The notes: generated by a model from the letters alone, not told the origin. Positions 25,430 through 61,969 are shown, counted from the first letter of the stretch. The stretch is DNA of 64,000 bases from Macrostomum lignano (GCA_002269645.1 NIVC01002435.1:93664-157663), one strand, 5' to 3'. Program-made: numbers and translations.

Positions 25430-28400
25430 TCATATTCTGCCCTAGTCTGCCCTCTTCATCTTCTACTCTGCTCTATTCTCATTCTATTCTATTCGATTCT
25501 CATTCTATTCTGTTCCGTTCTCATTATATTCTGTTCTATTCTCATTCTACTTCTGTTCTGTTCTCATTCTATTCTGTTTTATTCTCATTCTATTCTATTC
25601 TGTTCTCATTCTATTCTGTTTTATTCTCATTCTATTCTGTTTTATTCTCATTCTATTCTATTCTGTTCTCATTCTATTCTGTTTTATTCTCATTCTATTC
25701 TGTTTTATTCTCATTCTATTCTGTTCTGTTCTCATTCTATTCTGTTTTATTCTCATTCTATTCTGTTTTATTCTCATTCTATTTTGTTCTGTTCTCATTC
25801 TATTCTGTTTTATTCTCATTCTATTCTGTTTTATTCTCATTCTATTCTGTTCTGTTCTCATTCTATTCTGTTTTATTCTCATTCTATTCTGTTTTATTCT
25901 CATTCTATTCTGTTCTGTTCTCATTCTATTCTGTTTTATTCTCATTCTATTCTGTTTTATTCTCATTCTATTCTGTTCTGTTCTCATTCTATTCTGTTTT
26001 ATTCTCATTCTATTCTGTTCTGTTTTCATTCTATTCTGTTTTATTCTCATTCTATTCTGTTCTGTTCTCATTCTATTCTGTTCTATTCTCATTCTATTCT
26101 GTTCTGTTCTCATTCTATTCTGTTTTATTCTCATTCTATTCTGTTCTGTTCTCATTCTTTTCTGTTCTATTCTCATTCTATTCTGTTCTGTTCTCATTCT
26201 ATTCTGTTCTATTCTCATTCTATTCTGTTCTGTTCTCATTCTATTCTGTTTTATTCTCATTCTATTCTGTTCTGTTCTCATTCTATTCTGTTCTATTCTC
26301 ATTCTATTCTGTTCTGTTCTCATTCTATTCTGTTTTATTCTCATTCTATTCTGTTCTGTTCTCATTCTATTCTGTTCTGTTCTCATTCTATTCTGTTTTA
26401 TTCTCATTCTATTCTGTTCTGTTCTCATTCTATTCTGTTTTATTCTCGTTCTTTTCTCATTCTATTCTCATTCTATTCTGTTCCGTTCTCATTCTATTCT
26501 GTTCTGTTCTCATTCTATTCTGTTTTATTCTCATTCTATTCTGTTCTGTTCTCATTCTATTCTGTTCTGTTCTCATTCTATTCTGTTTTATTCTCATTCT
26601 ATTCTGTTCTGTTCTCATTCTATTCTGTTTTATTCTCATTCTATTCTGTTCTGTTCTCATTCTATTCTGTTTTATTCTCATTCTATTCTGTTTTATTCTC
26701 ATTCTATTCTGTTCTGTTCTCATTCTATTCTGTTTTATTCTCATTCTATTCTGTTTATTCTCATTCTATTCTGTTCTGTTCTCATTCTATTCTGTTTTAT
26801 TCTCATTCTATTCTGTTCTGTTCTCATTCTATTCTGTTCTATTCTCATTCTATTCTGTTCTGTTCTCATTCTATTCTGTTATATTTTCGTTCTTTTCTCA
26901 TTCTATTCTCATTCTATTCTGTTCCGTTCTCATTCTATTCTGTTCTATTCTCATTTTACTTCTGTTCTATTGTGTTCTGTTCTCATTCTATTCTGTTCTA
27001 TTCTCATTCTATTCTCATTCTACTCTGTTTTATTCTCATTCTATTCTATTCTATTCTCATTCTATTCTGTTCCGTTCTCATTCTATTCTATTCTCATTCT
27101 ATTCTATTCTATTCTGTTTTGTTCTCATTCTACTTTGTTCTATTCTCATTCTATTCTGTTCTATTCTCGTTCTTTTCTGTTCTATTCTCATTCTATTCTG
27201 TTCTATTCTCATTCTACTCTGTTCTATTCTCATTCTATTCTGTTCTGTTCTCATTCTATTCTGTTCTGTTCTCATTCTATTCTGTTTTATTCTCATTCTA
27301 TTCTGTTCTGTTCTCATTCTATTCTGTTCTATTCTCATTCTATTCTGTTCTGTTCTCATTCTATTCTGTTTTATTCTCATTCTATTCTGTTCTGTTCTCA
27401 TTCTATTCTGTTCTATTCTCATTCTATTCTGTTCTGTTCTCATTCTATTCTGTTCTATTCTCATTCTATTCTGTTCTGTTCTCATTCTATTCTGTTTTAT
27501 TCTCATTCTATTCTGTTCTGTTCTCATTCTATTCTGTTCTATTCTCATTCTATTCTGTTCTGTTCTCATTCTATTCTGTTTTATTCTCATTCTATTCTGT
27601 TCTGTTCTCATTCTATTCTGTTCTGTTCTCATTCTATTCTGTTTTATTCTCATTCTATTCTGTTCTGTTCTCATTCTATTCTGTTTTATTCTCGTTCTTT
27701 TCTCATTCTATTCTCATTCTATTCTGTTCCGTTCTCATTCTATTCTGTTCTGTTCTCATTCTATTCTGTTTTATTCTCATTCTATTCTGTTCTGTTCTCA
27801 TTCTATTCTGTTCTGTTCTCATTCTATTCTGTTTTATTCTCATTCTATTCTGTTCTGTTCTCATTCTATTCTGTTTTATTCTCATTCTATTCTGTTCTGT
27901 TCTCATTCTATTCTGTTTTATTCTCATTCTATTCTGTTTTATTCTCATTCTATTCTGTTCTGTTCTCATTCTATTCTGTTTTATTCTCATTCTATTCTGT
28001 TTATTCTCATTCTATTCTGTTCTGTTCTCATTCTATTCTGTTTTATTCTCATTCTATTCTGTTCTGTTCTCATTCTATTCTGTTTTATTCTCATTCTATT
28101 CTGTTCTGTTCTCATTCTATTCTGTTCTATTCTCATTCTATTCTGTTCTGTTCTCATTCTATTCTGTTTTATTCTCGTTCTTTTCTCATTCTATTCTCAT
28201 TCTATTCTGTTCCGTTCTCATTCTATTCTGTTCTATTCTCATTTACTTCTGTTCTATTGTGTTCTGTTCTCATTCTATTCTGTTCTATTCTCATTCTATT
28301 CTCATTCTACTCTGTTTTATTCTCATTCTATTCTATTCTATTCTCATTCTATTCTGTTCCGTTCTCATTCTATTCTATTCTCATTCTATTCTATTCTATT

Positions 28401-31060
28401 CTGTTTTGTTCTCATTCTACTTTGTTCTATTCTCATTCTATTCTGTTCTATTCTCGTTCTTTTCTGTTCTATTCTCATTCTATTCTGTTCTATTCTCATT
28501 CTACTCTGTTCTATTCTCATTCTATTCTGTTCTGTTCTCATTCTATTCTGTTTTATTCTCATTCTATTCTGTTTTATTCTCATTCTATTCTGTTCTGTTC
28601 TCATTCTATTCTGTTTTATTCTCATTCTATTCTGTTTTATTCTCATTCTATTCTGTTCTGTTCTCATTCTATTCTGTTTATTCTCATTCTATTCTGTTCT
28701 GTTCTCATTCTATTCTGTTTTATTCTCATTCTATTCTGTTCTGTTCTCATTCTATTCTGTTCTATTCTCATTCTATTCTGTTCTGTTCTCATTCTATTCT
28801 GTTTTATTCTCATTCTATTCTGTTCTGTTCTCATTCTATTCTGTTCTATTCTCATTCTATTCTGTTCTATTCTCATTCTATTCTGTTCTATTCTCATTCT
28901 ATTCTGTTCTGTTCTCATTCTATTCTGTTTTATTTTCGTTCTTTTCTCATTCTATTCTCATTCTATTCTGTTCCGTTCTCATTCTATTCTGTTCTATTCT
29001 CATTTACTTCTGTTCTATTGTGTTCTGTTCTCATTCTATTCTGTTCTATTCTCATTCTATTCTCATTCTACTCTGTTTTATTCTCATTCTATTCTATTCT
29101 ATTCTCATTCTATTCTGTTCCGTTCTCATTCTATTCTATTCTCATTCTATTCTATTCTATTCTGTTTTGTTCTCATTCTACTTTGTTCTATTCTCATTCT
29201 ATTCTGTTCTATTCTCGTTCTTTTCTGTTCTATTCTCATTCTATTCTGTTCTATTCTCATTCTACTCTGTTCTATTCTCATTCTATTCTCATTCTATTCT
29301 GTTTTATTCTCATTCTATTCTATTCTATTCTCATTCTATTCTGTTCCGTTCTCATTCTATTCTATTCTCATTCTATTCTATTCTATTCTCATTCTAATTT
29401 GTTCTATTCTCATTCTATTCTGTTCTATTCTCATTCTATTCTGTTCTATTCTCGTTCTTTTCTGTTCTATTCTCATTCTATTCTGTTCTATTCTGATTCT
29501 ACTTTGTTCTATTCTCATTCTATTCTGTTTTGTTCTCATTCTACTTTGTTCTATTCTCATTCTATTCTGTTCTGTTCTCATTCTATTCTGTTCTATTCTC
29601 ATTCTACTTTGTTATATTCTCATTCTATTCTGTTCTATTCTCGTTCTATTCTGTTCCGTTCTCATTCTATTCTGTTCCGTTCTCATTCTATTCTATTCTC
29701 ATTCTATTCTATTCTATTCTGTTTTGTTCTCATTCTACTTTGTTCTATTCTCATTCTATTCTGTTCTATTCTCGTTCTTTTCTGTTCTATTCTCATTCTA
29801 TTCTGTTCTATTCTCATTCTACTTTGTTCTATTCTCATTCTATTCTGTTTTGTTCTCATTCTACTTTGTTCTATTCTCATTCTATTCTGTTCTATTCTCG
29901 TTCTTTTCTGTTTTATTCTCATTCTATTCTGTTCTATTCTCATTCTACTTTGTTCTATTCTCATTCTATTCTGTTTTGTTCTCATTCTACTTTGTTCTAT
30001 TCTGTTCTATTCTCGTTCTATTGTGTTCGATTCTCATTCTATTCTGTTCTATTCTCATTCTATTCTTATTCTATTCTGTTCCGTTCTCATTCTATTCTGT
30101 TCTATTCTCATTCTACTTCTGTTCTATTCTGTTCTGTTCTCATTCTATTCTGTTCTATTCTCATTCTATTCTCATTCTACTTCTGTTCTATTCTCATTCT
30201 ATTCTGTTTTATTCTCATTCTATTCTATTCTATTCTCATTCTATTCTGTTCCGTTCTCATTCTATTCTATTCTCATTCTATTCTATTCTATTCTCATTCT
30301 ATTCTGTTCTATTCTCATTCTACTTTGTTCTATTCTCATTCTATTCTGTTCTATTTTCGTTCTTTTCTGTTCTATTCTCATTCTATTCTGTTCTATTCTG
30401 ATTCTACTTTGTTCTATTCTCATTCTATTCTGTTTTGTTCTCATTCTACTTTGTTCTATTCTGTTCTATTCTCGTTCTATTGTGTTCGATTCTCATTCTA
30501 TTCTGTTCTATTCTCATTCTACTTTGTTCTATTCTCATTCTACTTTGTTCTATTCTCATTCTACTTTGTTCTATTCTCATTCTACTTTGTTCTATTCTCA
30601 TTCTACTTTGTTATATTCTCATTCTATTCTGTTCTATTCTCGTTCTATTCTGTTCTGTTCTCATTCTATTCTGTTTTATTCTCATTCTACTTTGTTCTAT
30701 TCTCATTATATTCTGTTCTATTCTCATTCTATTCTATTCTATTCTCATTCTATTCTGTTCTATTCTCATTCTATTCTATTCTATTCTAATTCTATTCTGT
30801 TCTATTCTCGTTCTATTGTGTTCTATTCTCATTCTATTCTGTTCTATTCTTATTTTATTCTGTTCTATTCTCATTCTACTTTGTTCTATTCTCGTTCTAT
30901 TGTGTTCTATTCTCAGTCTATTCTGTTCTACTCTCATTATATTCTGTTCTATTCTCGTTCTTATCTGTTCTATTCTCATTCTATTCTGTTCTATTCTGAT
31001 TCTATTTTGTTCTATTCTCGTTCTATTCTGTTCTATTCGTATTCTATTGTTCTATTTGCG
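25430..31060. repeat. 5.6-kb pentamer-based satellite (ttcta/ttctg/ttctc/attct) with 20/25-bp periodicity and internal block duplications
   Basis: Directly visible; explains the 1901-aa, 1143-aa and (MRIEQNR)n ORFs. Confidence 0.97.
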
Positions 31061-34998: not shown

Positions 34999-35689
34999 CG
35001 CTGGGCTGCGGGGCGAAGGCCAAAATTTGTATTTAAATCCAGCAATGCTAATTGAGACTACTAATAGTAGGTGAAATGCGTGCAAAAAATAACTGTAGAA
35101 TGGAACAATTCTGTACTGGAATATTCGAGTACCAAAACGAGAGAAGAAAGGCGCACACTATTTAAAGGCAGTCATTGCGCAACAGTATATTTGGTGTTAA
35201 TCGGAATGTACTGTAAATAATAGACTATTAGTAATATCATAATAATAAATACGTACATGGAATGAATCAGCAATTTACACATCTTAAAGTCACAGCCATT
35301 GGATAGCAAAATACCAGCAAAAAGCCGATGAAGTGAAGGAATTTATCGTAGCAACAAAAGTGCAAATTAAAAAACCCAAACAGCTTGAAGCTGGAAGCTG
35401 GCTAAGAGACTGTATTATTCGGGTAACAAATATGATGGGACTTGTAGAAATTTTACTTTTAATATTAAACTCAAAGATGATATGATATGATAATTTCAGA
35501 GAGCAGCAGTCAGTGAGTTCGCTGTGCGCTGAGGTGAGTTGGATCCGGTGGATCCCAGCCTCCCAGCATCAGGCAGAGTTCAAAATCAAATTAAATATAT
35601 TGTACCGACGTCTCTACCCTATTCCTGAATATTTAATCAAGTATCCTTGATTAAATATTAGACGTCATGGCAGAGACAGTCACTATCTC

Positions 35690-36742: not shown

Positions 36743-39892
<3,150 letters not shown>

Positions 39893-41395
39893 TTCTTTCT
39901 TTGCTTGAGTTTACTTGCTGACTTTGTGAAGCAGAAAATTTAAAGCCTTAATAAGAATAAAAAAGACTTAATGGTGACAATTTTTGTCATGACCTACTTA
40001 TAAAATGCTTCTCTTGTGTTGTCAGTCACTAGCGAAAATTCACTTACTAAATAAGTCTTGAAAACTGCAAAGATGAACAATTCATGACATATTACAATTC
40101 AAAAGACTTTTTGGTCTTCACTAGGCACTAATGGTTTCTTTAATATAATTGTTTTTTAAAAGAATTTTACCAACAATATAAAAGCAGTCAGTATATCTAA
40201 TGGATAAATAGGATTAAAGCCATAACTATATCTAATGTATTGGCTTTTATAAAATATCTAAACCATATTTCTTTTTTCATATAACTTGTAAATTTACATT
40301 TTTATATTTTTACAAAAGTTACATTGATTTTTTACTGTGAAAACATACAAGCACGCATAGATCAAGGTATTAATATTTGAATTGAAGTAAATATATATAT
40401 TGAATAAAAAGTACACTTGTAATTTAAAAAATCATTCTACATACAAATTTACTTAAAAATAAAATCAATTACATTGTTTTTTGTTTCACTAGATTATGAA
40501 TACGTTTTAATTGATCTCAATATAAGCATATTTTAGCTCGTTTTGGCTTCAAATGAAATTTACTTATCAATAAAAATTGAAAATGCCTTAATCGGTTGGG
40601 AAATTTCTTAGGCGGATGCCATGGGCCGCAAGCCGCGACTTTCAATACTAAAAATGTGTTCATTTTTTTCATTCAAAATTCAGCGATGTCTCAAAGTTAA
40701 GCATAAAAACAAAAAGTTTTTCTTTGCTATTTTGATCATAATTTAATTTATATTCACTATACGTAACGTAAATCTTAGATTTTAGATAGATAGTTTTTAG
40801 CTTGTGAAATCGGAACTTTTAAACGATCTTTTAATGAGTATACTAGTAGTCCTGTCCTGTCCGTTAAGAGTCCTTATCAATAATTTAATTTTTTTCAGAA
40901 TAACTTTATTTAAACTTGAGTTCAGTCGTATGTATGACAGTGGCTGCGAATGCAGCGAATGGTTAGATTTTTTATAAAATCGAGTCTCTATTTTATGGCA
41001 GTGGCTGCTGACTGCTGCTGCAGCAAGCAGGGATTCTCATCTTGGAATTTATCAAAAATGAACCAACTAATCTTGACTTACTGACAAGCAATGAGATGGT
41101 CCACTCCATTTGAGATGCTGTTGCAATAGGCCTAGTCTAGTCCTAGATATAAATCTTAAATCTTGGTCCAATGGCAATGGTGTAATCTAGATTAATACTA
41201 ATAGCATATTATCTTTTCCTACAGGGTAATAATATGCCCTGTTAGTGTTATCTCCGATTCTCCTTTAATATGAACCTTTATCTCCTTTCTTCTACTTTAT
41301 TTGGCAAACCCTTCTTCATCTCCTTTATTTGGAAGATTTTTGGGACTTTCTCCTTTATTTTAGCCACTCTAGGCCCCTAGCTCCTAAGATTTTTA

Positions 41396-41726
41396 GGCTA
41401 TCCTGGAGAATTGTTCATTAAATTCGCTGTATGTACATTTTTTAGCTATTGACATAAAACTTTCTAAAAATGAATACTTTAATTATGCCAACATTTTAGA
41501 AGTGTTTAGAAGTGTCTACATTTCATATTTGGAAAGTTCCATGGTTCCTAGAAAAACCTAGAAATTGCAATAAAATATAACTTACAACCCCCTGCACAAA
41601 TTGAATTTTAATGTCAAAACACTTCTAAAATGTTGGCATAATGAAAGTATTCATTTTTGGCAAGTTTCACATCAATAGCTAAAATGTGCATACAGTGAAT
41701 TTAATAAACAATTTGGTAGGATAGCC
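41396..41726. mobile_element. Foldback MITE with ~115-bp inverted repeats
   Basis: ggctatcct...attatgccaacattttagaagtgttt (41396-~41507) is the reverse complement of ~41615-41726. Confidence 0.75.
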
Positions 41727-42159
41727 AATTTTTAGCATACAATACATACTTAATACATTATTAGTTTAGCCTTTAGGGTCCTTTTAAATAATAATTTATA
41801 AGAAGACTATTCTATTGACTTGTATTATTTTCCTAGACAAAGTTATGTAGAAGAATAGTTTGTAAGTCTCAACAAAATGGTTTGTATATATGATTAGTTA
41901 CTAATTGAATATACTTTAAAGCATCAATCCTAGGTTAGCCACGATATCAGATTGGCCCTATGTGGAACTATGGAGTTGGTGATATATAAGTTACTTTCAG
42001 GGCTGCAAATTGGCCAGAAGGATGACCTGATCAAAGCAATCAACAAATGGGCCACAGAATAAAACAACCATGAGAATACTATGTCCTACAAACTGGCTTT
42101 CAAAGCAGGGATTGGTAGATTTAAATTGTCTTTTACCTTAAAAGCTAGATAAAGAAGCT

Positions 42160-42720
42160 AGCTAATGGCTTCAGGGGCAGATGAGAGTAGAAAAAGGAAT
42201 GAATTGACAATAAAAAGAGAGGAAAGGTAAGAGAAGGGATAAGAAAGAAAAATATAAGAGGATACAGGAGGGTAAAGAGAGAGGGCAGACAAGAAAGAAA
42301 GAGAAATGAAAAGGCAGTAGAAGAGAAAAGGAGATAAGAAAGATAAAAAAGAGTAGAAAGGAAAAAGAAGCAAGTAAACAGAGAAGAGAACAGATAAAAG
42401 AAAAGAAATTAAAGAGAAAAGATAATAAGGGAAAGAGAAAAGAGAAAACAGAGGAGATAGAAAGGACAAGAAAGAGAAAAGATAAAAGAGCTAAGTGAAG
42501 AAAGGAAAGATGAGAGAGCTAAGAGTCAAGATAAAAGATAAAAGAGCTAAAAGAAAAGAGGAAAAAGATGAGAGAGCAGAGGGTAAGAGGAAAGAGTTAA
42601 GAAAGAGTGGAGATGAGCAAGATAAGAGAGAAGAGTAGAGAAGACAAGAGAAAGGGAAAAAGAGAAAAGAAACAAAAGGAGATGGAAGTTTCAGAGCACC
42701 CAAGGTATATAGAGAGATGC
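42160..42720. repeat. Degenerate GA-rich low-complexity tract
   Basis: Purine-rich with no stable period. Confidence 0.8.
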
Positions 42721-43339
42721 AGAGGCAAAAGGCCAGAGTTTGTTAATACAGGCCTTAGACAGACATTGCTTGTCATTCTATGGTAATACCAACTAAGAAG
42801 ATCAATGTACCCTCAAATCTTAAATTACCACAAATTTACTCCAATTTTTATTTATCTTTCTTCTAACTATTAATACGTTTTTCTTAGAGTATGACTTCAC
42901 ATTTAAAAATATTGTTCCAGGGATTGAACTCATTTAAAATCTGTAGGTTATAGCAGTTTGTTGAAGTATAAATGTAACAAATGAGTGATGTATATTTAGG
43001 TCCATATTGTTATGTTACATATCAGTCAGTCTTCTTTATTTTACTTGCTCAAAATGTGTGGGCACCCTGTTCCTAATAAGTAATTTATAAATGGCCTAAA
43101 TATGCCTAGATCAATTATTATTTTTAGTTCAATCTAGATGTTAAGCTGATTAAAAGTCTAAAGATATAATATAAAAATGTAGGTCTAGGCAATGTGCCTA
43201 ATCATTTTACTTTTAGAATGTTGGCCTATAATTAGAAATAATAACTATAGGCCTAGCCCTAGCTAGGCCTTAAAAGTTTAATAAAAAGGAAGCTTCTACT
43301 CTATTACATAGATTAATACAATGACAACAACAATATATA

Positions 43340-43577
43340 TTTATTATTGCGGTAGAGAAGCACTCTTAACAGATAATAGTAAGACAAAACTCAATATTAT
43401 TTGCGACGCGTTTCGGCTAAAACTAGCCATCTTCAGGCACTATCGAACAGAATTTATTTCAACCTATTAAATACTGTGTAGACGACAAAATCAGGTATTG
43501 AAAAGATATAAAAGGACTAAAGGATCAATGTACAGTATAGCAATGTTCATAATATTTTGTGGAATGACAGGACAGAG

Positions 43578-43620
<43 letters not shown>

Positions 43621-44200
43621 GCGTATGCGCCCCAAATGTACTCTAGCTTAGAACACCAACAGCTGTTCACTCGCACCTCCTCCAGATAGTTGGACATTGA
43701 GAGTGGGTTTGTGTAACTTAATGTGCAGAGCTTCAAGAATGTTAAGTTTATGCTCATTTTTGCTGTTGTCTATGACCTTGAAATGAGAGGTTATGTCTGG
43801 CTCATCACAACAACCATGGCATTGTAGCAAATGTTCATGAATCGGAGAGTTTCGTTGCCTATGTTCCTTGGCTCTCGTGAGAAGGTGTCGCTTGGTTTTA
43901 CCAATGTAGGTAATGCTCTGGTCAACAGAGCAACGAAAACAATAGATGACACCTGCCTTGAGAGCACATGGAACACGAGACTTTAAACTCCCAACAAATT
44001 GACTGACTTTATGAGTACGGAACACTACATGAATCTTAGTCTTAAAGAATTTTTGGCAAGTTTTGCGAATTTGCCTCTTAAACACAATCGAAGAGTTGCC
44101 CAAAAAAGGAAGAGTCAAGATTGGTTCTCCTGGTTCTCTATCTGGCCGCTTAGGTTTAACCTTTTTTTTCAATTTTTTCATCTAATAAATATAATAAATA
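43340..44200 (-). mobile_element. 5'-truncated Penelope-like element: GIY-YIG endonuclease ORF (44181-43648) plus a 3' pLTR region
   Basis: LPFLG, GVIYCFRC...YIGKTKRHLLTRAKEH...LNILEALHIKLHKPTLNVQ is the Penelope-type GIY-YIG domain; a hammerhead motif lies ~210 nt downstream. Confidence 0.88.
43402..43439 (-). ncRNA. Minimal type I hammerhead ribozyme
   Basis: UGC-CUGAAGA-U-GGCUA(GUUU)UAGCC-GAAA-CGCG-UC/GCA: complete catalytic core, 5-bp stem II, 3-bp stem I, palindromic ACGCGU stem III; predicted cleavage after GUC at 43405. Confidence 0.85.
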
Positions 44201-44829
44201 TATTTATTAGCCAGTCAAACAAGTTAAAGTCAAATATAATTATTATAAGATATATTTGAAGGCCTAGAATCAATATAAATAGTCTATATTAGACTACACT
44301 GCTAGCAATGTCTAGGGTGCTGGTATCAGCTAGCAGGCAGCTAATAATTAATAAAGCAAGCACCAAGATAGAGCCTATCTTTCCCAGTACATTATTATTT
44401 ATTAGATAATCTAGATTAATATTATGTTATAAAATAGGCCTAATAGTAACTATTATTATTATTAGGCCTAATAGAAGGTTTAGTATAATAATAATATAGG
44501 TTAGACCTATTCATCACCTTCATTAATATAATTGCCATAAATTATAAAAGCATATGATAATAAGAATATAAGTGTCTTGATTATAGCTTATAGAGACTAT
44601 TAAAATAGGCTTTAACCTAAATGCTAAGGGGTGCCTTTATTTATTTACAACTACTTCACTTCAGTTGCTAAGCATTTTTGGTATTTCCATAAGCTTAAAA
44701 ATCAAATATATATATATTTCAATATTTAATTATTAATAATTAGGCCTAATTATTATAATTATACATCTTTATAAATAGAGTAACTATTGTACCATAATTA
44801 TATAACTCAAAAGATTAACTATTAAATAA

Positions 44830-45330
44830 ATATTTTAGTGCATGCCTGCCTCTGCTGATAAGGTGCCTGCAACATTAGCAATAGCATATTTTGTACTGGT
44901 TCTGGGTAGTACAACTTGGCACAGATGATGTGGACTACCAGCTGGAGTTGCTGATGGTGCAGCAGTTTGCTTGGATAGACCCAGACTAGTGTGGTAATAC
45001 AAAGCTGCATTGGTCACTTGCTCATAGCCAATCTTGAAGGTGGCATATAGTAGGCCAGTGTGCACCAAATCAACTTGTTGCTTGAGCAACTCTATCAGTG
45101 TCCAGGTCTCAGCATTGTATAGCAGGATGGTCTCAACATTGCCTAGAACAATGCCACCCTCTGGTGGTCAAGTAAGGCCTTGGACTGTAGGACTGCCCTC
45201 ACAGACCAAAAGGCAGCCCAGGCAAGCCCGTGGCAATGTTGCACCTCATAGACACTGGGAACCAGACTGCCGAGATAGACAAACTGCTGACAATGCAGTC
45301 ACCTGTCCATCAGCGCCTTGGCACTAAATT
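44830..45330 (-). mobile_element. Degenerate RTE-clade LINE (C-terminal part of the RT ORF)
   Basis: Interrupted frames give QFVYLGS, GLAWAAF..RAVLQSKAL, ETILLYNAETWTL and VTNAALY, with stops and frameshifts. Confidence 0.75.
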
Positions 45331-45403
45331 GCTGCCTCAATGTCGTCTGGCATGCAGAACACAAATGTCTTTTGTATGTTGACCACCAGGTATGTTTGCC
45401 TCA

Positions 45404-45490
45404 ATAAGACAGTCATAGTTACTCCTGCCGTTTACCCAAAGTTGTGTCAATTTTGCTTTAGGATTTTTTTTACATGTAAGTCGCATTTTT
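45404..45490 (+). repeat. Dispersed repeat fragment shared with the nested element at ~15165-15250
   Basis: taagacagtcatagttactcctgccgtttacccaaa...aattttgctttagg occurs at both loci. Confidence 0.8.
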
Positions 45491-46364
45491 GGCCAAAAAC
45501 TAATTCGCACGGCTGACCAAATTTTGGAGGTTGCGCATGTATGTTGGAAGAGCAGTCTGCAGCACCCAGTCAAGCACCAGAATGAATAGTTACCAAGGTT
45601 TATAATGGCGTCCATAATAATCCTGAAGACTATCACTAAAGTTATGATAAGGCTATTTCCTTTACTATAGTTTACTCTTATTGCTGGCACCAAGCTGTTA
45701 CAATGGCAAATTAGGTGAATTTCTCAGATCCTATATCTGGATATCCTTACCCTTTGATAGGAATTCTGCCTTCTAAGGCGATTTCTCTTAGATTTTAAAT
45801 CTGGAGGTCTCATTCTCTGAGAATAGAGTGAATTCTCCCAATCTTGGGGCTTTCAATGCTCCTAAATAACCAAGACAGAAGTATTGCTTAAGCTTTTTAA
45901 TGTAGAAGCAAATAAAAGAACAGGTTGACTCCTCTTCTACTGGCTACTCATGTTTTGATCGGCTTTCCTTGCTGTGATTTAAACCAAGAAAATTTTACAA
46001 TATTTATAATATTCCTAATATTATAATGTTTGAACGAATTAGCATATTTTTAAAACAATACTTTCTAAGAAAGCATTTTTAAATAAGGCCTATTTCATAT
46101 AGATAAATAAGTATCTATATATAGCAAAGACAAGCAGGGCTTGTTATGTTTGGTACAATTTTATACTTTAAAAAATATATTCATTTAAAAACTGTGAAAA
46201 GCAAGAAAGCATGCATTTTACAAGGCCTTGTGGATTTTATTGGACTAGAAATTCTCAGAAAGTATAGTTTTTGAATTTCCTATTAAATTTCATATAGATT
46301 TTAAAGACTATTGAGTATTCTACTGTAGAACTTCTGCTCAATTGAGTCAACCCAAATATCTCAG

Positions 46365-49300
46365 GCATTTGCTGGCTCCAGCAGCGAGCAGCCGCCACCC
46401 AATCGGCAGCGCTGGTGGTGCAGCCTGTGCAACTGCGGCACCAGCAAAGGCTCCAAATTGGCCAACCACCTCACCGACCAGGAGCACACCTTGCAGCTGC
46501 TCACAGCTGGTGTCGGCTTCGCCCGCTCCGACCTGCTGCTGACTTGCGGCGTCCAGTCTGGGGATTCGCTGCGCAGGTGGAACAAGTACATCATTGGCCG
46601 GACCCTGCTGGACAAGGCTGCTGGTGCCTGGTGCCTGCAGGCCGGCCTCCTGTCTGAGCAGCAGTGGATGAGCATGCTCAACTCTGTTAACAATGCGGTT
46701 GAGCAGTCTGGCGGCTGGATGAAGCCGCTCTACATTCAGTTGTCTAACGATGACGTCTTCGCAGCCTCCGCGGCGGCTGCCGCCTCTCTTGAGCCGGCGC
46801 CATTCCTGCTTGTGCACAGCCTGCACTGCTCCATTAAGGATCTTACCAGACTGGTGTCCGACCTGGGCCCCGAGGCCAAGAAGCCCGTCTTCCTCGGCAG
46901 CACGGCGAGCTGCTGCGCTCTTGTGCCGCTCGAGCGCCAGCCGCCACGCGCCGCCACGCGCCTGGCGTTTGACGCCGCAGTCGGCGCCATCAAAGCCAGC
47001 AACAGCTTTAGCGGCTCAGCGGAACCGCTGCTCAACTTCCTCTGGCTGGAGGCCGGCCCTCCCGTCCGGCTCGGCCGCGACCCCGGCCAGCGCCTGGACC
47101 TGGACCCGCCCAGCTTGGCCGCTGCGGCCGCCTCCGCCGCTGCCGGGCCCGCAGGCCTCAGCCTTGGCGTCTTCTGCGACATGACTGTGCCAGAGGAGAT
47201 CGATTTTGGTGAGCGGCTGCCTTCTTCATTACACTGCCCCTCCGCCACTCAGCTCACACTGCTGTCACTCAGCTCACACTGCTGTCAGTCAGCTCACACT
47301 GTTGTCACTCAGCTCACACTGCTGTCACTCAGCTCACACTGCTGTCACTCAGCTCACACTGTTGTCAGTCAGCTCACACTGCTGCCACTCAGCTCACACT
47401 GTTGTCAGTCAGCTCACACTGCTGTCACTCAGCTCACACTGTTGTCACTCAGCTCACACTGTTGTCACTCAGCTCACACTGCTGTCACTCAGCTCACACT
47501 GTTGTCACTCAGCTCACACTGCTGTCACTCAGCTCACACTGTTGTCAGTCAGCTCACACTGCTGTCAGTCAGCTCACACTGCTGTCACTCAGCTCACACT
47601 GTTGTCAGTCGGCTCACACTGCTGTCAGTCAGCTCACACTGCTGTCACTCAGCTCACACTGCTGTCCCTTCGCACTGACAGACGAGCCCAGCGAAGCCGC
47701 CATCAACAGCACCGACAGCTTCTACAACGACGCAGACGATGCGGCAGACGACCCAGAGATCCGGAACGGCCAGGCGCCTGCTGCTGCCGACGGGGCCTCG
47801 GGCAGCGGTGGCCCAGCCGAGAAGCGGCGTCGTCGGGACTCGCGAGTGACCTGCGGCTTTAGCGTGGTCGGACCGGACAGCCTGCCGCGGGTCTGGCGTC
47901 TCACCGGCTTCAAGCTGACGGCCAGAGCTGACGACATCGAGCTGGCCTTGCGGCGCCGCGTTTCTTTCCAGTTTGATCAGGTCTGGCTTTGCCGCTGACT
48001 GTGTTGCCTGCTGCTGACTGTGTTCCCTGCTGCTGACTGTGTTCCCTGCTGCTGACTGTGTTCCCTGCTGCTGACTGTGTGTTCCCTGCTGCTGACTGTG
48101 TTCCCTGCTGCTGACTGTGTGTTCCCTGCTGCTGACTGTGTGTTCCCTGCTGCTGACTGTGTGTTCCCTGCTGCTGACTGTGTGTTCCCTGCTGCTGACT
48201 GTGTGTTCCCTGCTGCTGACTGTGTGTTCCCTGCTGCTGACTGTGTGTTCCCTGCTGCTGACTCTGTGTTCCCTGCTGCTGACTGTGTTCCCTGCTGCTG
48301 ACTGTGTGTTCCCTGCTGCTGACTGTGTTGCCTGCTGCTGACTGTGTTCCCTGCTGCTGACTGTGTTGCCTGCTGCTGACTGTGTTCCCTGCTGCTGACT
48401 GTGTTGCCTGCTGCTGACTGTGTTTCCTGCTGCTGACTGTGTTTCCTGCTGCTGACACAGGCCTGCCATTGCAAAGCCAGTGAGAGCTGACACAGCCTGC
48501 CACTGCCATTGCAAAGCCAATGAGAGCTGACACAGCCTGCCATTGCAAAGCCAGTGAGAGCTGACACAGCCTGCCATTGCAAAGCCAGTGAGAGCTGACA
48601 CAGGCCTGCCATTGCAAAGCCAGTGAGAGCTGACACAGCCTGCCATTGCAAAGCCAGTGAGAGCTGACACAGGCCTGCCATTGCAAAGCCAGTGAGAGCT
48701 GACACAGGCCTGCCATTGCAAAGCCAGTGAGAGCTGACACAGGCCTGCCATTGCAAAGCCAGTGAGAGCTGACACAGGCCTGCCATTGCAAAGCCAGTGA
48801 GAGCTGACACAGGCCTGCCATTGCAAAGCCAGTGAGAGCTGACACAGGCCTGCCATTGCAAAGCCAGTGAGAGCTGACACAGGCCTGCCATTGCAAAGCC
48901 AGTGAGAGCTGACACAGGCCTGCCATTGCAAAGCCAGTGAGAGCTGACACAGGCCTGCCATTGCAAAGCCAGTGAGAGCTGACACAGGCCTGCCATTGCA
49001 AAGCCAGTGAGAGCTGACACAGGCCTGCCATTGCAAAGCCAGTGAGAGCTGACACAGGCCTGCCATTGCAAAGACAGTGAGAGCTGACACAGGCCTGCCA
49101 TTGCAAAGCCAGTGAGAGCTGACACAGGCCTGCCATTGCAAAGCCAGTGAGAGCTGACACAGGCCTGCCATTGCAAAGCCAGTGAGAGCTGACACAGGCC
49201 TGCCATTGCAAAGCCAGTGAGAGCTGACACAGGCCTGCCATTGCAAAGCCAGTGAGAGCTGACACAGGCCTGCCATTGCAAAGCCAGTGAGAGCTGACAC

Positions 49301-51908
49301 AGGCCTGCCATTGCAAAGCCAGTGAGAGCTGACACAGGCCTGCCATTGCAAAGCCAGTGAGAGCTGACACAGGCCTGCCATTGCAAAGCCAGTGAGAGCT
49401 GACACAGGCCTGCCATTGCAAAGCCAGTGAGAGCTGACACAGGCCTGCCATTGCAAAGCCAGTGAGAGCTGACACAGGCCTGCCATTGCAAAGCCAGTGA
49501 GAGCTGACACAGGATTGCCATTGCAAAGCCAGTGAGAGCTGACACAGGCCTGCCATTGCAAAGCCAGTGAGAGCTGACACAGCCTGCCATTGCAAAGCCA
49601 GTGAGAGCTGACACAGCACACAGGCCTGCCATTGCAAAGCCAGTGAGAGCTGACACAGGCCTGCCATTGCAAAGCCAGTGAGAGCTGACACAGGCCTGCC
49701 ATTGCAAAGCCAGTGAGAGCTGACACAGGCCTGCCATTGCAAAGCCAGTGAGAGCTGACACAGGCCTGCCATTGCAAAGCCAGTGAGAGCTGACACAGGA
49801 TTGCCATTGCAAAGCCAGTGAGAGCTGACGCAGTCACGGCCACCCGCCGGTTTCAGGTGATCAGCTACTCTGACTGCTCAATGTCGGACAGAAGCTTTGC
49901 CGGGGTGCCGAAGTCCAACCTGCCCAAAGACCCGAACTGCCGGGCCGCCCTGCTGACTGAGAGCTCCGGCCTGCCCGCCGAGGCTGCCCAATCCGCCCTG
50001 CTCTGCGCCGCTCAACAACCGGAAGTTCAGCTGCTGTGCGATCGAAAGCTCGAAATTTCAACTTCCAGCCGCCGCGACCGGCCGGACTGGCTGCCGCTGG
50101 GGTTTGGCGACGGCCTGTCCAGCAGGAGCCAGTTCCTCGTGCTGGCCGACTTTGCCCCGGCACTGCCCTGCACACAGGAAGTCGCCTTAAAGCAACTGCG
50201 GAGTCTGCTGCCCCTGGCGCGGAGCTTTCATCTGCCGGGTGAAACTGTGGGGCACAGTAGCAGGCATCCGTCCAATGGGTGAGTTTTTAGGAAATGACAT
50301 TTGAGGGTCAGTTTTATAGCTTTTCACTTACAGTTTGGCATGCTCAATCGAGATCTGGATTTGCATTTGCTCTGAGTGGGGAAGATTCTGGACTCGGAGA
50401 TCGGGATGGGGAAGATTCTGAACTCGGAGATCTGGATTTGCATTGGCTCTGAGTAGGGAAGATTCTGGACTCGGAGATCGGGATGGGGAAGATTCTGGAC
50501 TCGGAGATCAGGATGGGGAAGATTCTGGACTCGGAGATCAGGATGGGGAAGATTCTGGACTCGGAAATCGGGATGGGGAAGATTCCTGACTCGGAAATCG
50601 GGATGGGGAAGATTCTGGACTCGGAAATCGGGATGGGGAAGATTCTGGACTCGGAAATCGGGATGGGGAAGATTCCTGACTCGGAAATCGGGATGAGGAA
50701 GACTCTAGACTTGGAAATCGGGATGGGGAAGATTCTGGACTCGGAAATCGGGATGGGGAAGAGTCTGGACTCGGAGATGGGATGGGGAAGATTCTGGACT
50801 CGGAGATCTGGATTTGAATTGGTTCTGAGTGGGGAAGATTCTGGACTCGGAGATCGGGATGGGGAAGATTCTGGACTCGGATATCAGGATGGGGAAGATT
50901 CTGGACTCGGAAATCGGGATGGGGAAGATTCCTGACTCGGAAATCGGGATGGGGAAGATTCTGGACTCGGAAATCGGGATGGGGAGGATTCTGGACTCGG
51001 AAATCGGGATGGGGAAGATTCCTGACTCGGAAATCGGGATGAGGAAGACTCTAGACTTGGAAATCGGGATGGGGAAGATTCTGGACTCGGAGATCTGGAT
51101 TTGCATTGGCTCTGAGTGGGGAAGATTCTGGACTCGGAGATCGGGATGGGGAAGATTCTGGACTCGGAGATCTGGATTTGCATTGGCTCTGAGTGGGGAA
51201 GATTCTGGACTCGGAGATCGGGATGGGGAAGATTCTGGACTCGGAACTCGGGATGGGGAAGTATCTGATGTTGGAATTCGGGATGAGGAAGATTCTGGAC
51301 TCGGAACTCGGGATGGGGAAGATTCCTGACTCGGAAATCAGGACTGAGAAACTTGGACAGTAAGCCATTGCGTATTAAAAGTCAGTTTAGAAATGGAGAA
51401 TCCGCAGCTTTTATTCCTGATTGAAGCCGCTCTCCTCTCCAGCCGCAAATTGGTCAGCGTTTTGGCCATCGCCCGGTTCGACCGGCACGAGGACTGCGCC
51501 AAGTCGCTGGGCCTCGTCACCGCCGAGGGCATCAGCAAGTCCAGCTCCCAGCAGCTGCTCTGCCGCTTCGCCGCCATGCCGCAGCACGCGACCCTTGGGC
51601 CGCTCCGGCTGCCGGTGCACAACTGCGTCATCTGGACCCGGCTCGGCGAATCCTCCGCCGGCTCCGTCGCTGGCGATACCTTGACGATGGACGGGGCGCC
51701 CTTCGTCTGCGAATGCCACACTGGCGGCCGCTACTGTCACGCCGCTACCAGCTTCCGCCGCTGCGTCGACGCCGCCTCCGACATGGCGCAGCGACTGCCG
51801 CGAGACGCTTCGCCCGAGGAGGCCAGGCGGATCGCCCTGCAGTGCCTGAAGCCGCTGCTGTCCAGCAGATCGGCGCCTTGGGAGAGGGACCTGGCAGCTT
51901 ACAGATAG
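46365..51908 (+). CDS. Uncharacterised ~677-aa protein with an N-terminal U1/matrin-type C2H2 zinc finger and two putative RRM-like segments; exons 46365-47208, 47682-47980, 49857-50278, 51443-51908; no genomic ATG at the 5' end
   Basis: CSLC-x12-H-x5-H (WWCSLCNCGTSKGSKLANHLTDQEH). Three GT-AG introns of phase 1, 0 and 2 give a continuous 2031-nt frame with coding-like composition. The RRM assignment is inferred from beta-alpha-beta patterns only. Confidence 0.72.
47235..47665. repeat. 20-bp minisatellite, intron 1 of the zinc-finger gene
   Basis: Unit cagctcacactgctgtcact. Confidence 0.95.
47995..49830. repeat. Compound array in intron 2: 19/21-bp unit (47995-48455) followed by a 35-bp unit (48455-49830)
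   Basis: Units ctgctgctgactgt(gt)gttcc and gacacaggcctgccattgcaaagccagtgagagct. Confidence 0.95.
50350..51350. repeat. 30-bp minisatellite, intron 3
   Basis: Unit gaagattctggactcggaaatcgggatggg. Confidence 0.95.
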
Positions 51909-60286: not shown

Positions 60287-61969
60287 TTAGCTGGTCCGAC
60301 GTGCGGCCAGCGCTTCATCGACCAGCTGCAGTTGCTGCAGGAGCCGCTCCCGCCTGTCCAGCAGATCTGCCAGAATGCCGTCTCCATCGTCGTCGGCCAC
60401 GCCGCCATCGTCGGCCGCAGCAGCTGTCGCCGCCGCAGAAGCCGAGTCCACGGTCAGACGAGCCAGGCCGCCAGCCAGCGATTCGTAGCTGCCGGTGAGA
60501 GACGTCACGCGGCTTTCCTCGTCGTAACGCGTCATTGGCGCTGCGGACGGAGGCGGCGGCGACGGTGTCTGCGTCGACTTCGACCGGCGCGCGGCCGCCT
60601 TCGTCGGCGGCTTCAATGCCTCATTGGCGACATCAGCTGTCTGCGCGTCCCGATGCCGGAAGTCGGGCTCGTCGGTCTGCGCCGCGGCCGACTTGAAGCC
60701 GCTGCCGGCCGGCCAGTCGTCGGTCTGGGCCCAGCGGTCCACCGGGCAGGCCTGGCCGAGCCTGGCCAGACGGAGCCGGAGCCGCTGCTCGATCTCGGCC
60801 GCGTGCAGCCGCTCCGACAGATGATTGGCGACATCGTTCAGCGGCCGCTGGAACAGCGACACGTCAGTTCCGTGTGCGTCCGGCGCCGACTGCGGCACAA
60901 ACTCGCCGTCAGCCGGGGCGGCGGCAGCGTCTCGGGCCAGCTGCAGGCGGCGGCGCGAGCGCCACTGCGCCAGGATGTCGTCCTGCTGGTTGGCGGAGTC
61001 GTTCTCGGCTGGCGCTGCAGCTGCTGACGAAGATTCGACAAAGCGCGGCCGGTACGGCGTCTCTTCGACCTCCTGCGATTGGAATCGGATTCTGACGGTC
61101 AGTTGAATGGCGGAGCAGCTGAACGCGTCTGACTCGAGCGCCAGGACCCCCGGTTCGATTCCGTGCACAGGCACAGAGAGTGTACGTGCCTGACGATCAG
61201 GGCCGCTGTACACCCTGTATGAGTGCGGGCCTGCGTGCAGTACTGGCGCGCTAGAATGCGCTCAGGAGTCGGCGGCATGGGCAGAATCGCCTCAGCGTCC
61301 AAGTTGCGAGACGATTTCGCCAAAGGCGTCGCACCAGGGTGTCCGTAGCCCTCGGTTGCATAAATTTATTTGTTTTAATTAGCTCCTTTGTCTGCAGGGG
61401 GCTTATAATACTATTGGAGACCGGAAACAAGCCAGCGCATCTTTTCGAAGAGAATGTGATAAAGGGTGGACTTTGTACTTAATTCCAGTGTTCCTTAACT
61501 AGCCAAGAACCGGAAACACGCGCGAGCCCGGCACAAACCTGGACCAACTCGAACTCGTCCGAGTTGGCAGTGGCGGTGTCCTCGGCCTCCTCCTCGGCGC
61601 ACTCGTCCGGCCCGAATCCGGCCACGCCGCCGGAGCTCCGGCTGAGGCTGCGCGGCCTCTCCCGCCGGCCGTACGGCTCGAAGTGCTGCGGATTCGAGCG
61701 GCGCCGAAGCTTTCCGCCGGCGCCGGTGCCTAGCGACGCGTCCGGTGGCGGCGACGGCGACAAGGCGGAGGCGTCGGCACCAGCTGAGTCGGGGCCAAGC
61801 CACCAGAAGTCGGCCGGATTGGCCGGCTCGCGATCGCCTCGGCCAGCTGGCGGTTAGCGCGAAATCTGGCGATGTACTGCCCGATGGTGGACGGCTCGGC
61901 GTTCGCGGGCGGCGCCGCGGCGCTGGCGCCGGCGGCCGAGTTGGCCCTGTGTGCTGCGACCGTGGCGCG
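60287..61969 (-). CDS. PROSER3: PROSER3-like (C19orf55) protein, exons 61969-61539 and 61072-60287, with an apparent 1-nt frameshift near 61855
   Basis: Three PROSER3 blocks in the expected order: IGQYIARFR, PADFWWL and DDILAQWRSRRRLQLA, plus a C-terminal coiled coil ILADLLDRRERLLQQL. Phase-0 intron cag|gtttgt...tcgcag|gag. Confidence 0.72.
61097..61375 (+). mobile_element. tRNA-derived SINE in the PROSER3 intron (antisense)
   Basis: A box tggcggagcagctg (61108-61121) and B box ggttcgattcc (61152-61162). The head shares cgcgtc.gactc....cgccag with the SINE at 25253; AT-rich 3' end. Confidence 0.7.

What the first reader, a model, noticed from the sequence alone, without database searches (positions are those of the whole stretch)
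46326..46670. Third ATG-less gene start: the zinc finger is translated only if Met comes from outside
caaatatctcag|GCA TTT GCT is in phase 0, with an in-frame TAG at 46326. The first in-frame ATG (46668) lies downstream of an intact C-x2-C-x12-H-x5-H finger. The 6 kb upstream show only AT-rich DNA and transposon relics. Three genes in one 64-kb window start cag|GCN in phase 0, which argues for a systematic mechanism (SL-supplied AUG, Met-Ala N-termini) rather than chance.
Basis: partly seen in the sequence, partly recalled or inferred. Interest (0 to 1): 0.75.

Follow-up and report, generated by a model that had tools for sequence, protein, structure and literature searches.

The report
Flatworm gene borrowing its start codon
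This Macrostomum lignano (flatworm) gene has no start codon of its own and most likely takes its ATG from the spliced-leader RNA added to its mRNA, a mechanism described in flatworms in 2006; this gene is one more case of it, and it explains why databases list the gene as "partial".

Summary
A coding exon begins at the acceptor ...atatctcag|GCATTTGCT (46365). An in-frame TAG lies 13 codons upstream (46326). The first in-frame ATG is codon 102 (46668). An intact C-x2-C-x12-H-x5-H finger lies between them (46419-46487). Codon usage shows that the ATG-less stretch is translated in frame 0.

The window is the last 64 kb of Macrostomum lignano scaffold NIVC01002435.1. The gene is BOX15_Mlig003869g2 (PAA57901.1). 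This gene and its two near-identical copies all have RNA-seq-based models annotated "partial". Each model starts 6-12 nt after this acceptor and has no upstream exon.

The M. lignano spliced leader ends ...TTGCATG, so trans-splicing here would give AUG|GCA and a 677-aa Met-Ala-Phe-Ala protein. No SL-containing read could be inspected.

The mechanism is not new. Use of the flatworm SL 3'-terminal AUG as initiator Met was described in 2006 and was noted as likely for Macrostomum in 2023.

The statistical argument from phase 0 and GCN is weak. A second ATG-less start was found at 25391(-). A similar-looking "cag|GCG" start at 39710(-) does have an upstream ATG exon.

Interest is low. The practical value is for annotation.

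The parts
39893..46364 (+). Intergenic region and presumed outron. It is AT-rich DNA with transposon relics, lying between the divergent MAPK gene (ATG at 39892 on the - strand) and the target gene. The transcription start site is unknown.
   Evidence: GC is 0.30-0.36. GIY-YIG relic at 43651-44181(-). No convincing phase-0 ATG exon. The last 62 nt are identical in the three gene copies, while a 167-bp indel at about 46129-46295 separates the copies.
46326..46328 (+). In-frame TAG, 13 codons upstream of the exon start. It closes the reading frame on the 5' side.
   Evidence: Conserved in all three copies.
46359..46364 (+). 3' splice acceptor TCTCAG|, the proposed spliced-leader trans-splice site. 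The AG is at 46363-46364.
   Evidence: It is the only AG between 46347 and 46379 and coincides with the GC change point. An ab initio model (A0A1I8JHP6) uses the same acceptor. It is close to the M. lignano trans-acceptor motif YTNCAG, with C instead of T at -5.
46365..47208 (+). Coding exon 1 (844 nt). It starts with GCA TTT GCT GGC (Ala-Phe-Ala-Gly) and ends at the donor G|gtgagc.
   Evidence: The translation from residue 5 onward is identical to PAA57901.1.
46419..46487 (+). C-x2-C-x12-H-x5-H zinc finger (CSLCNCGTSKGSKLANHLTDQEH), similar to the zf-met/U1 type.
   Evidence: phmmer match to the repeated zf-met fingers of KAM0911430.1, E=8.5e-6. It falls below Pfam's own detection.
46668..46670 (+). 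First genomic in-frame ATG (codon 102). UniProt model A0A1I8HZW6 starts here and lacks the finger.
47209..47681 (+). Intron 1, filled by a 20-bp minisatellite.
47682..47980 (+). Coding exon 2.
47981..49856 (+). Intron 2, made of 19-bp and 35-bp minisatellites.
49857..50278 (+). Coding exon 3.
50279..51442 (+). Intron 3, made of 30-bp minisatellites. A second in-phase acceptor lies at 51385|51386.
51443..51908 (+). Coding exon 4, including the stop TAG at 51906-51908.

Best explanation
The locus is Macrostomum lignano gene BOX15_Mlig003869g2. It is a four-exon gene encoding a 676-aa orphan protein with an N-terminal zf-met-like zinc finger.

Its first genomic exon begins at a 3' splice acceptor (46365), not at a start codon. 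The proposed sequence of events is this:
1. The pre-mRNA is transcribed from somewhere in the AT-rich upstream region.
2. The 5' part (the outron) is removed by spliced-leader trans-splicing.
3. The 35-nt SL (...AATTTATTGCATG) is joined to GCA, giving ...UUGCAUG|GCAUUUGCU.
4. The SL's terminal AUG sits in a good Kozak context (G at -3, G at +4). It is in frame and becomes the initiator, giving Met-Ala-Phe-Ala-Gly-... (677 aa).

What is shown:
- The exon boundary, and the coding status and frame of the ATG-less 101 codons.
- The absence of any genomic AUG or near-cognate start upstream of the finger.
- The organism and its SL sequence.
- The absence of an upstream exon from three transcript-based models.

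What is inferred:
- That the SL is actually spliced at 46365.
- That its AUG is the codon used.
For: - The window is identical (0 mismatches in 25,532 nt) to NIVC01002435.1 of M. lignano.
- PAA57901.1 equals the window's spliced translation from residue 5 onward.
- PAA57901.1, PAA76760.1 and PAA55279.1 are three copies at 98% identity. All are annotated 'partial'. They begin at +12, +9 and +6 nt from the same acceptor.
- That annotation was built from RNA-seq after trimming the SL.
- The M. lignano SL is CGGTCTCTTACTGCGAAGACTCAATTTATTGCATG, and 30-39% of the genes are trans-spliced.
- All flatworm SLs end in AUG, and this AUG serves as initiator Met (Cheng et al. 2006, as cited). [quoted passage not shown] - Coding signal runs from 46365: codon-usage score +26 to +38 bits in frame 0 and strongly negative in the other frames; GC3 is 0.82.
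- The GC step and the only available AG fall at 46363/4.
- The in-frame TAG and the 62 nt before the acceptor are conserved in all copies.
- A second gene in the window, nicolin-like at 25391(-), shows the same architecture.
Against: - No SL-containing read, cDNA or protein starting MAFAG was found. The 90% cluster holds only the partial and truncated models.
- The annotated 5' ends are ragged (+6 to +12) rather than exactly at the acceptor. They may therefore come from read coverage rather than from a mapped SL peak.
- The polypyrimidine tract is weak (53% Y), and the site misses the YTNCAG motif at one position.
- One phase-0 ATG micro-exon candidate at 45151-45171 (CAA|GTAAGG) is preserved in all three copies.
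- The complete absence of ATG in all frames of 46365-46667 is also what a 5'UTR would show.
Confidence: 0.8

Rival explanations
1. An unannotated upstream cis-spliced exon supplies the ATG. The acceptor at 46365 would then be an ordinary internal acceptor in phase 0.
For: - The same window holds a precedent. The MAPK exon starting tttcag|GCGCCGGC (39710, - strand) looks ATG-less, but a 109-nt ATG exon in lower-GC DNA lies 73 nt upstream.
- A scan found 99 phase-0 ATG...|GT candidates in the 6.5 kb upstream. Of these, 23 are preserved in the most diverged copy.
- The best candidate is 45151-45171 (MPPSGGQ, donor CAA|GTAAGG).
Against: - None of the three RNA-seq-based GenBank models has an upstream exon.
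- The candidates are what chance gives in 6.5 kb. None shows coding composition, and the best one lies inside a retroelement relic on the opposite strand.
- The 600 nt upstream are AT-rich and closed in all frames. They include a 167-bp indel between copies.
Confidence: 0.08
2. Translation starts at the first genomic ATG (46668). On this view 46365-46667 is a 5'UTR, the zinc finger is never made, and the protein is the model that UniProt A0A1I8HZW6 proposes.
For: - One database model starts there.
- The 303 nt contain no ATG in any frame, as expected of a scanned leader (P=0.043).
- Transcripts that escape trans-splicing would have to start here.
Against: - The stretch has the same codon-position GC pattern and codon usage as the downstream CDS (frame-0 z about 6-7).
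- It is open in all three copies.
- It encodes a finger with all four ligands conserved, and the finger matches zf-met repeats.
Confidence: 0.06
3. Either translation starts at a non-AUG codon on an un-trans-spliced transcript, or the copies are decaying pseudogenes with no functional start.
For: The differences between the copies show nonsynonymous changes at least as numerous as synonymous ones. The protein has no detectable homologue outside M. lignano apart from the finger.
Against: - There is no near-cognate codon in frame in codons 1-18.
- Upstream of the acceptor the frame closes at TAG after 12 AT-rich codons.
- All three copies keep a 676-codon frame open across three introns.
- The models are transcript-based, so the gene is expressed.
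Confidence: 0.03

Closest known systems
[quoted passage not shown]
   Same: - The SL ends in AUG.
- The acceptor is joined in frame to an ORF that has no start codon of its own before a needed N-terminal domain.
- The gene is monocistronic and has an outron.
   Different: - The case here is in a free-living macrostomorph, where use of the SL AUG has only been remarked on (G3 2023) and has not been analysed.
- The evidence here is genomic sequence plus annotation, not cDNA or translation assays.
slORFs: ORFs created by start codons inside spliced leaders (slORFfinder, Brief Bioinform 2023)
   Same: The start codon is supplied by the SL, so ORF finders working on genomic or SL-trimmed sequence miss the start.
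   Different: That work covered nematodes, Oikopleura and trypanosomes, using ribosome profiling. No flatworm ribosome-profiling set was used.
zf-met / U1-like C2H2 zinc fingers (Pfam PF12874, PF06220, PF12171)
   Same: C-x2-C-x12-H-x5-H spacing, W before the first Cys, Leu three residues before the first His, H-L after it. There is a phmmer match to zf-met repeats.
   Different: It does not reach any Pfam threshold. It is a single finger in a protein that is otherwise an orphan.

Membership tests
SL-AUG-initiated flatworm mRNA | The organism has an SL RNA whose leader ends in AUG | tested here: met
   The window is M. lignano NIVC01002435.1. The SL ends ...TTGCATG.
SL-AUG-initiated flatworm mRNA | [quoted passage not shown] | tested here: met
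   tctcag|GCA at 46365. It is the only AG at the GC change point. The same acceptor is chosen by an ab initio model.
SL-AUG-initiated flatworm mRNA | No upstream cis exon or donor is spliced to that acceptor | tested here: inconclusive
   Three transcript-based models have none. The sequence scan gives only chance-level candidates. Absence cannot be proven without reads.
SL-AUG-initiated flatworm mRNA | SL-containing reads or cDNAs end at that acceptor | not testable with these tools
   No read data or transcript contigs for this gene are in the collections.
SL-AUG-initiated flatworm mRNA | The SL AUG is in frame with the main ORF, with no stop between | tested here: met
   The exon starts on codon position 1 of a 676-codon ORF.
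SL-AUG-initiated flatworm mRNA | No genomic start codon would preserve the N-terminal domain | tested here: met
   The first ATG is codon 102, after the finger. There is no ATG in any frame and no near-cognate in frame before the finger.
SL-AUG-initiated flatworm mRNA | Translation from the SL AUG is demonstrated | not testable with these tools
   This needs ribosome profiling, N-terminal proteomics or a reporter assay.
zf-met / U1-like C2H2 zinc finger | C-x2-C-x12-H-x5/6-H ligand spacing | tested here: met
   CSLC-x12-H-x5-H at residues 19-41. The ligands are conserved in all three copies.
zf-met / U1-like C2H2 zinc finger | Score above the Pfam gathering threshold | tested here: not met
   No zinc-finger family is listed even at E<=10. 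There is only an indirect link: phmmer E=8.5e-6 to a protein made of zf-met repeats.
FIST domain protein (the name UniProt gives to A0A1I8HZW6) | Match to the Pfam FIST models | tested here: not met
   No FIST hit at E<=1 or E<=10. The AlphaFold model is too poor to test the fold (pLDDT 39.5).

The most novel reading that the evidence does not exclude
A sizeable class of M. lignano genes may have lost, or never had, their own start codon and depend wholly on the spliced leader's AUG. Two or three occur in this 64 kb alone. There might be selection for phase-0 acceptors followed by G/GCN (Kozak +4, Met-Ala N-termini).

If so, many GenBank 'partial' CDS would in fact be complete. The choice between trans-splicing and no trans-splicing could also switch between a full-length protein (with the finger) and an N-terminally truncated protein starting at the next ATG. 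No analysis of SL-AUG dependence in Macrostomum turned up in the papers searched here.
Probability: 0.35. Interest if true: 0.4.

Novelty: new member of a known kind. Interest (0 to 1): 0.22.

Why it matters
The value is mainly for annotation.

In M. lignano the public gene models were built after the SL was trimmed off. SL-AUG-dependent genes therefore end up in one of three wrong forms:
- as "partial" CDS (PAA57901.1 and its two copies);
- as N-terminally truncated proteins that lose a domain (A0A1I8HZW6 loses the zinc finger);
- as chimeras (A0A1I8JHP6).

Adding the SL ATG back at mapped trans-splice sites would complete such models.

Biologically, the case confirms that the flatworm SL-AUG mechanism probably operates in a basal free-living flatworm. 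A genome-wide count would show how much of the proteome depends on it.

Tried and rejected
- Word-indexed homology searches with exon 1, with its N-terminal part and with the neighbouring ENaC-like exon found nothing. Only the exhaustive HMMER search found the M. lignano proteins.
- Exact look-ups of the AP2-sigma protein (MIRF... and PAAMIRF...) found no record. I therefore could not calibrate how the annotation treats a certain SL acceptor.
- Rfam and ARAGORN found nothing in the window, and no SL RNA gene copy is in the window.
- My first exon-4 acceptor (51386) was wrong. The GenBank proteins show that 51443 is used.
- Counts of synonymous and nonsynonymous differences between the three copies are uninformative: only 2-5 differences in the 101 codons.
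- The single-sequence AlphaFold model is unusable (pLDDT 39.5), so I did not run a fold search.
- I considered reading the '.g2' suffix of the gene name as evidence that the annotation pipeline (TBONE) cut the transcript at a trans-splice site. I rejected this because name prefixes come from 95% clustering.
- The gene ids occur in no paper of the library, and the 2021 trans-splicing paper has no supplementary files held here.
- Pfam does not support the retrotransposon reading of 44838-45167(-) or the nicolin reading of the 25391(-) gene.

Full report
**1. The observation**

The sequence reads ...ctactgTAGaacttctgctcaattgagtcaacccaaatatctcag|GCATTTGCTGGCTCC....
- The TAG at 46326 is in frame with the long ORF.
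- The exon starts at 46365.
- The first in-frame ATG is at 46668, which is codon 102.
- Codons 19-41 (46419-46487) read CSLCNCGTSKGSKLANHLTDQEH, which is C-x2-C-x12-H-x5-H.

**2. Is the ATG-less stretch really coding, and where does the exon begin?**

- GC content jumps from 0.28 to 0.65, with a maximum-likelihood change point at 46359-46375. The only AG between 46347 and 46379 is at 46363/4.
- In 46365-46667 the GC content by codon position is .58/.53/.82. In the rest of exon 1 it is .67/.52/.80, and the same pattern holds in exons 2-4 when read in their phases.
- A codon-usage log-likelihood was trained on other genes of the window, or on the gene's own downstream exons. It gives +26 to +38 bits in frame 0 and -29 to -64 bits in frames 1 and 2, z about 6-7 against shuffles.
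- The 150 nt before the acceptor show no periodicity (.30/.30/.28).
- No ATG occurs in any frame of the 303 nt (P=0.043).
- None of codons 1-18 is a near-cognate start codon (read).

So a translated reading frame runs up to a splice acceptor and has no possible genomic start ahead of the finger.

**3. What the locus is**

Word-indexed protein searches found nothing. An exhaustive HMMER search found one cluster at 98% identity. Its members are named as follows:
- PAA57901.1, BOX15_Mlig003869g2;
- PAA76760.1, Mlig033722g1;
- PAA55279.1, Mlig030774g1.

All three are 'hypothetical protein, partial [Macrostomum lignano]'.

The contig carrying PAA57901.1 (NIVC01002435.1, 157,663 bp) is identical to the window over 25,532 nt. 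The window is the last 64 kb of that scaffold, and record coordinate = window coordinate + 93663.

The spliced translation of exons 46365-47208, 47682-47980, 49857-50278 and 51443-51908 is 676 aa. It equals PAA57901.1 exactly from residue 5 onward. My first guess for the exon-4 acceptor (51386) was corrected by these proteins to 51443. Each of the three introns is filled with minisatellites.

The protein has no Pfam domain. It has no homologue outside M. lignano except that its finger matches the repeated zf-met fingers of a grass protein. A single-sequence structure model was useless.

**4. How the databases handle the start**

- The three GenBank models begin SSSEQ, GSSSEQ and AGSSSEQ. These are 12, 9 and 6 nt after the same acceptor, and none has an upstream exon.
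- That annotation was assembled from RNA-seq mapped end-to-end, with SL sequences trimmed from the reads and from the de novo transcripts.
- A UniProt model (A0A1I8HZW6) starts at MSMLNSV, the ATG at 46668, and so drops the finger.
- Another UniProt model (A0A1I8JHP6, 2109 aa) is a chimera. It splices an antisense ORF of the neighbouring MAPK gene onto exactly this acceptor (...HRSTLL|AFAGSSS).

**5. Mechanism**

The M. lignano spliced leader is CGGTCTCTTACTGCGAAGACTCAATTTATTGCATG, and 30-39% of the genes receive it. Every reported flatworm SL ends in AUG. This AUG has been shown to serve as initiator Met (Cheng et al. 2006, cited). [quoted passage not shown] Joining the SL to 46365 gives UUGCAUG|GCA. 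This is in frame, with G at -3 and G at +4. The product would be Met-Ala-Phe-Ala-Gly..., 677 aa.

I rate this explanation at about 0.8. What is missing is a read or cDNA with the junction, and none is reachable with these tools.

**6. Rivals**

(a) An upstream ATG exon.
- The window itself shows that this can happen. The MAPK exon starting tttcag|GCGCCGGC (39710, - strand) is preceded by a 109-nt exon, at 39892-39784 on the - strand, with an ATG and a 73-nt intron, and it is in phase 1.
- For the target, a scan of the 6.5 kb upstream gives 99 phase-0 ATG...|GT candidates. Of these, 23 are preserved in the most diverged copy. The best is 45151-45171, MPPSGGQ with donor CAA|GTAAGG.
- None has coding composition, and no transcript model includes one.
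- The last 62 nt before the acceptor are identical in the three copies, but a 167-bp indel lies just upstream.

(b) Start at 46668 with a 303-nt 5'UTR. This is contradicted by the coding signal and the finger. It is compatible only with the lack of upstream ATGs.

(c) Non-AUG initiation or pseudogenes. There is no near-cognate codon, and the frames are intact in all three copies. The substitution counts are too small to say more.

**7. The 'systematic' argument**

I found a second gene of the same architecture.
- At 25391(-) the sequence is aattgaattgcag|GCC GAG ATC GTC, with an in-frame TAA five codons upstream.
- Exon 1 is 73 nt and has no ATG.
- It splices to an exon at 23989.
- The product aligns with human nicolin-1, whose sequence I recalled from memory, at E=8e-25. 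The conserved part starts inside exon 1. Pfam has no model to confirm this.

Other acceptors in the window sit just before a genomic ATG:
- AP2 sigma: cccag|CCAGCCGCC ATG. The SL AUG would be in frame.
- The gene at 35005(-): cgcag|CCCAGCG ATG. The SL AUG would be out of frame.

So SL-type acceptors are common here.

The statistical argument is weak, for three reasons.
- Phase 0 is required by construction for any gene chosen because its ORF reaches the acceptor. The prior is 1/3 per gene.
- CAG|G is the ordinary acceptor consensus.
- GCN is 29% of G-starting codons in this window's coding sequence, and the protein is 13% Ala.

**8. Verdict**

The mechanism has been known in flatworms since 2006 and has been noted for Macrostomum, so this gene is a new instance of a known kind. 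Its main value is for annotation: many 'partial' M. lignano CDS may be complete once the SL ATG is restored. A genome-wide census of SL-AUG dependence in Macrostomum did not turn up in the papers searched here, and it would be a modest but useful study.

Noticed in passing
window 25391-23989 (- strand): A second ATG-less gene start. The acceptor is ttgcag|GCCGAGATC in phase 0, with a TAA five codons upstream. Exon 1 is 73 nt (25391-25319) and has no ATG. It splices to 23989. The product resembles nicolin-1 (BLASTP E=8e-25 against the human sequence recalled from memory). It probably also depends on the SL AUG, giving MAEIVPLNV...
   Followed up: partly
window 39892-39710 (- strand): The MAP-kinase gene has an exon that starts tttcag|GCGCCGGC and looks ATG-less. 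In fact a 109-nt exon with an ATG (39892-39784 on the - strand) and a 73-nt intron precede it, and it is in phase 1. This is a warning for 'cag|GCN' pattern hunting.
   Followed up: yes
window 13212 (-) and 35005 (-): Two acceptors lie directly before genomic ATGs. For AP2 sigma the sequence is cccag|CCAGCCGCC ATG, so an SL AUG would be in frame and add MPAA. For the gene at 35005 the sequence is cgcag|CCCAGCG ATG, so an SL AUG would be out of frame and would have to be bypassed.
   Followed up: no
window 51386 and 51443 (+): Exon 4 of the target gene has two acceptors 57 nt apart, and both keep the frame. The GenBank models use 51443. Use of 51386 would insert 19 residues (LEMENPQLLFLIEAALLSS), so alternative splicing is possible.
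   Followed up: no
whole window, e.g. 25461-31056, 47246-47666, 48000-49833, 50377-51343: Minisatellites with units of 11-120 bp fill nearly every intron and much of the intergenic DNA (42 TRF rows). They include a 5.6-kb array of a 21-bp unit built from TTCTA. Array lengths differ between the gene copies: the gene spans 5532, 4350 and 4322 nt.
   Followed up: partly
window ~46129-46295; L003 ~9926: There is a 167-bp insertion/deletion between the copies about 70 nt upstream of the acceptor. The 62 nt next to the acceptor are identical in all three copies. Further upstream, identity to the most diverged copy drops to 83-88%.
   Followed up: partly
window 31833-62000 (UniProt A0A1I8JHP6): A 2109-aa UniProt model named 'RNase H domain-containing protein' is a chimera. 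It strings together antisense and repeat ORFs across about 30 kb, including the target gene.
   Followed up: no
window 61090-61240 (- strand): Read by eye, this stretch resembles a tRNA-derived element (...ggaatcgaaccggggg...) inside an open frame of a GC-rich exon-like region. ARAGORN calls no tRNA there.
   Followed up: no
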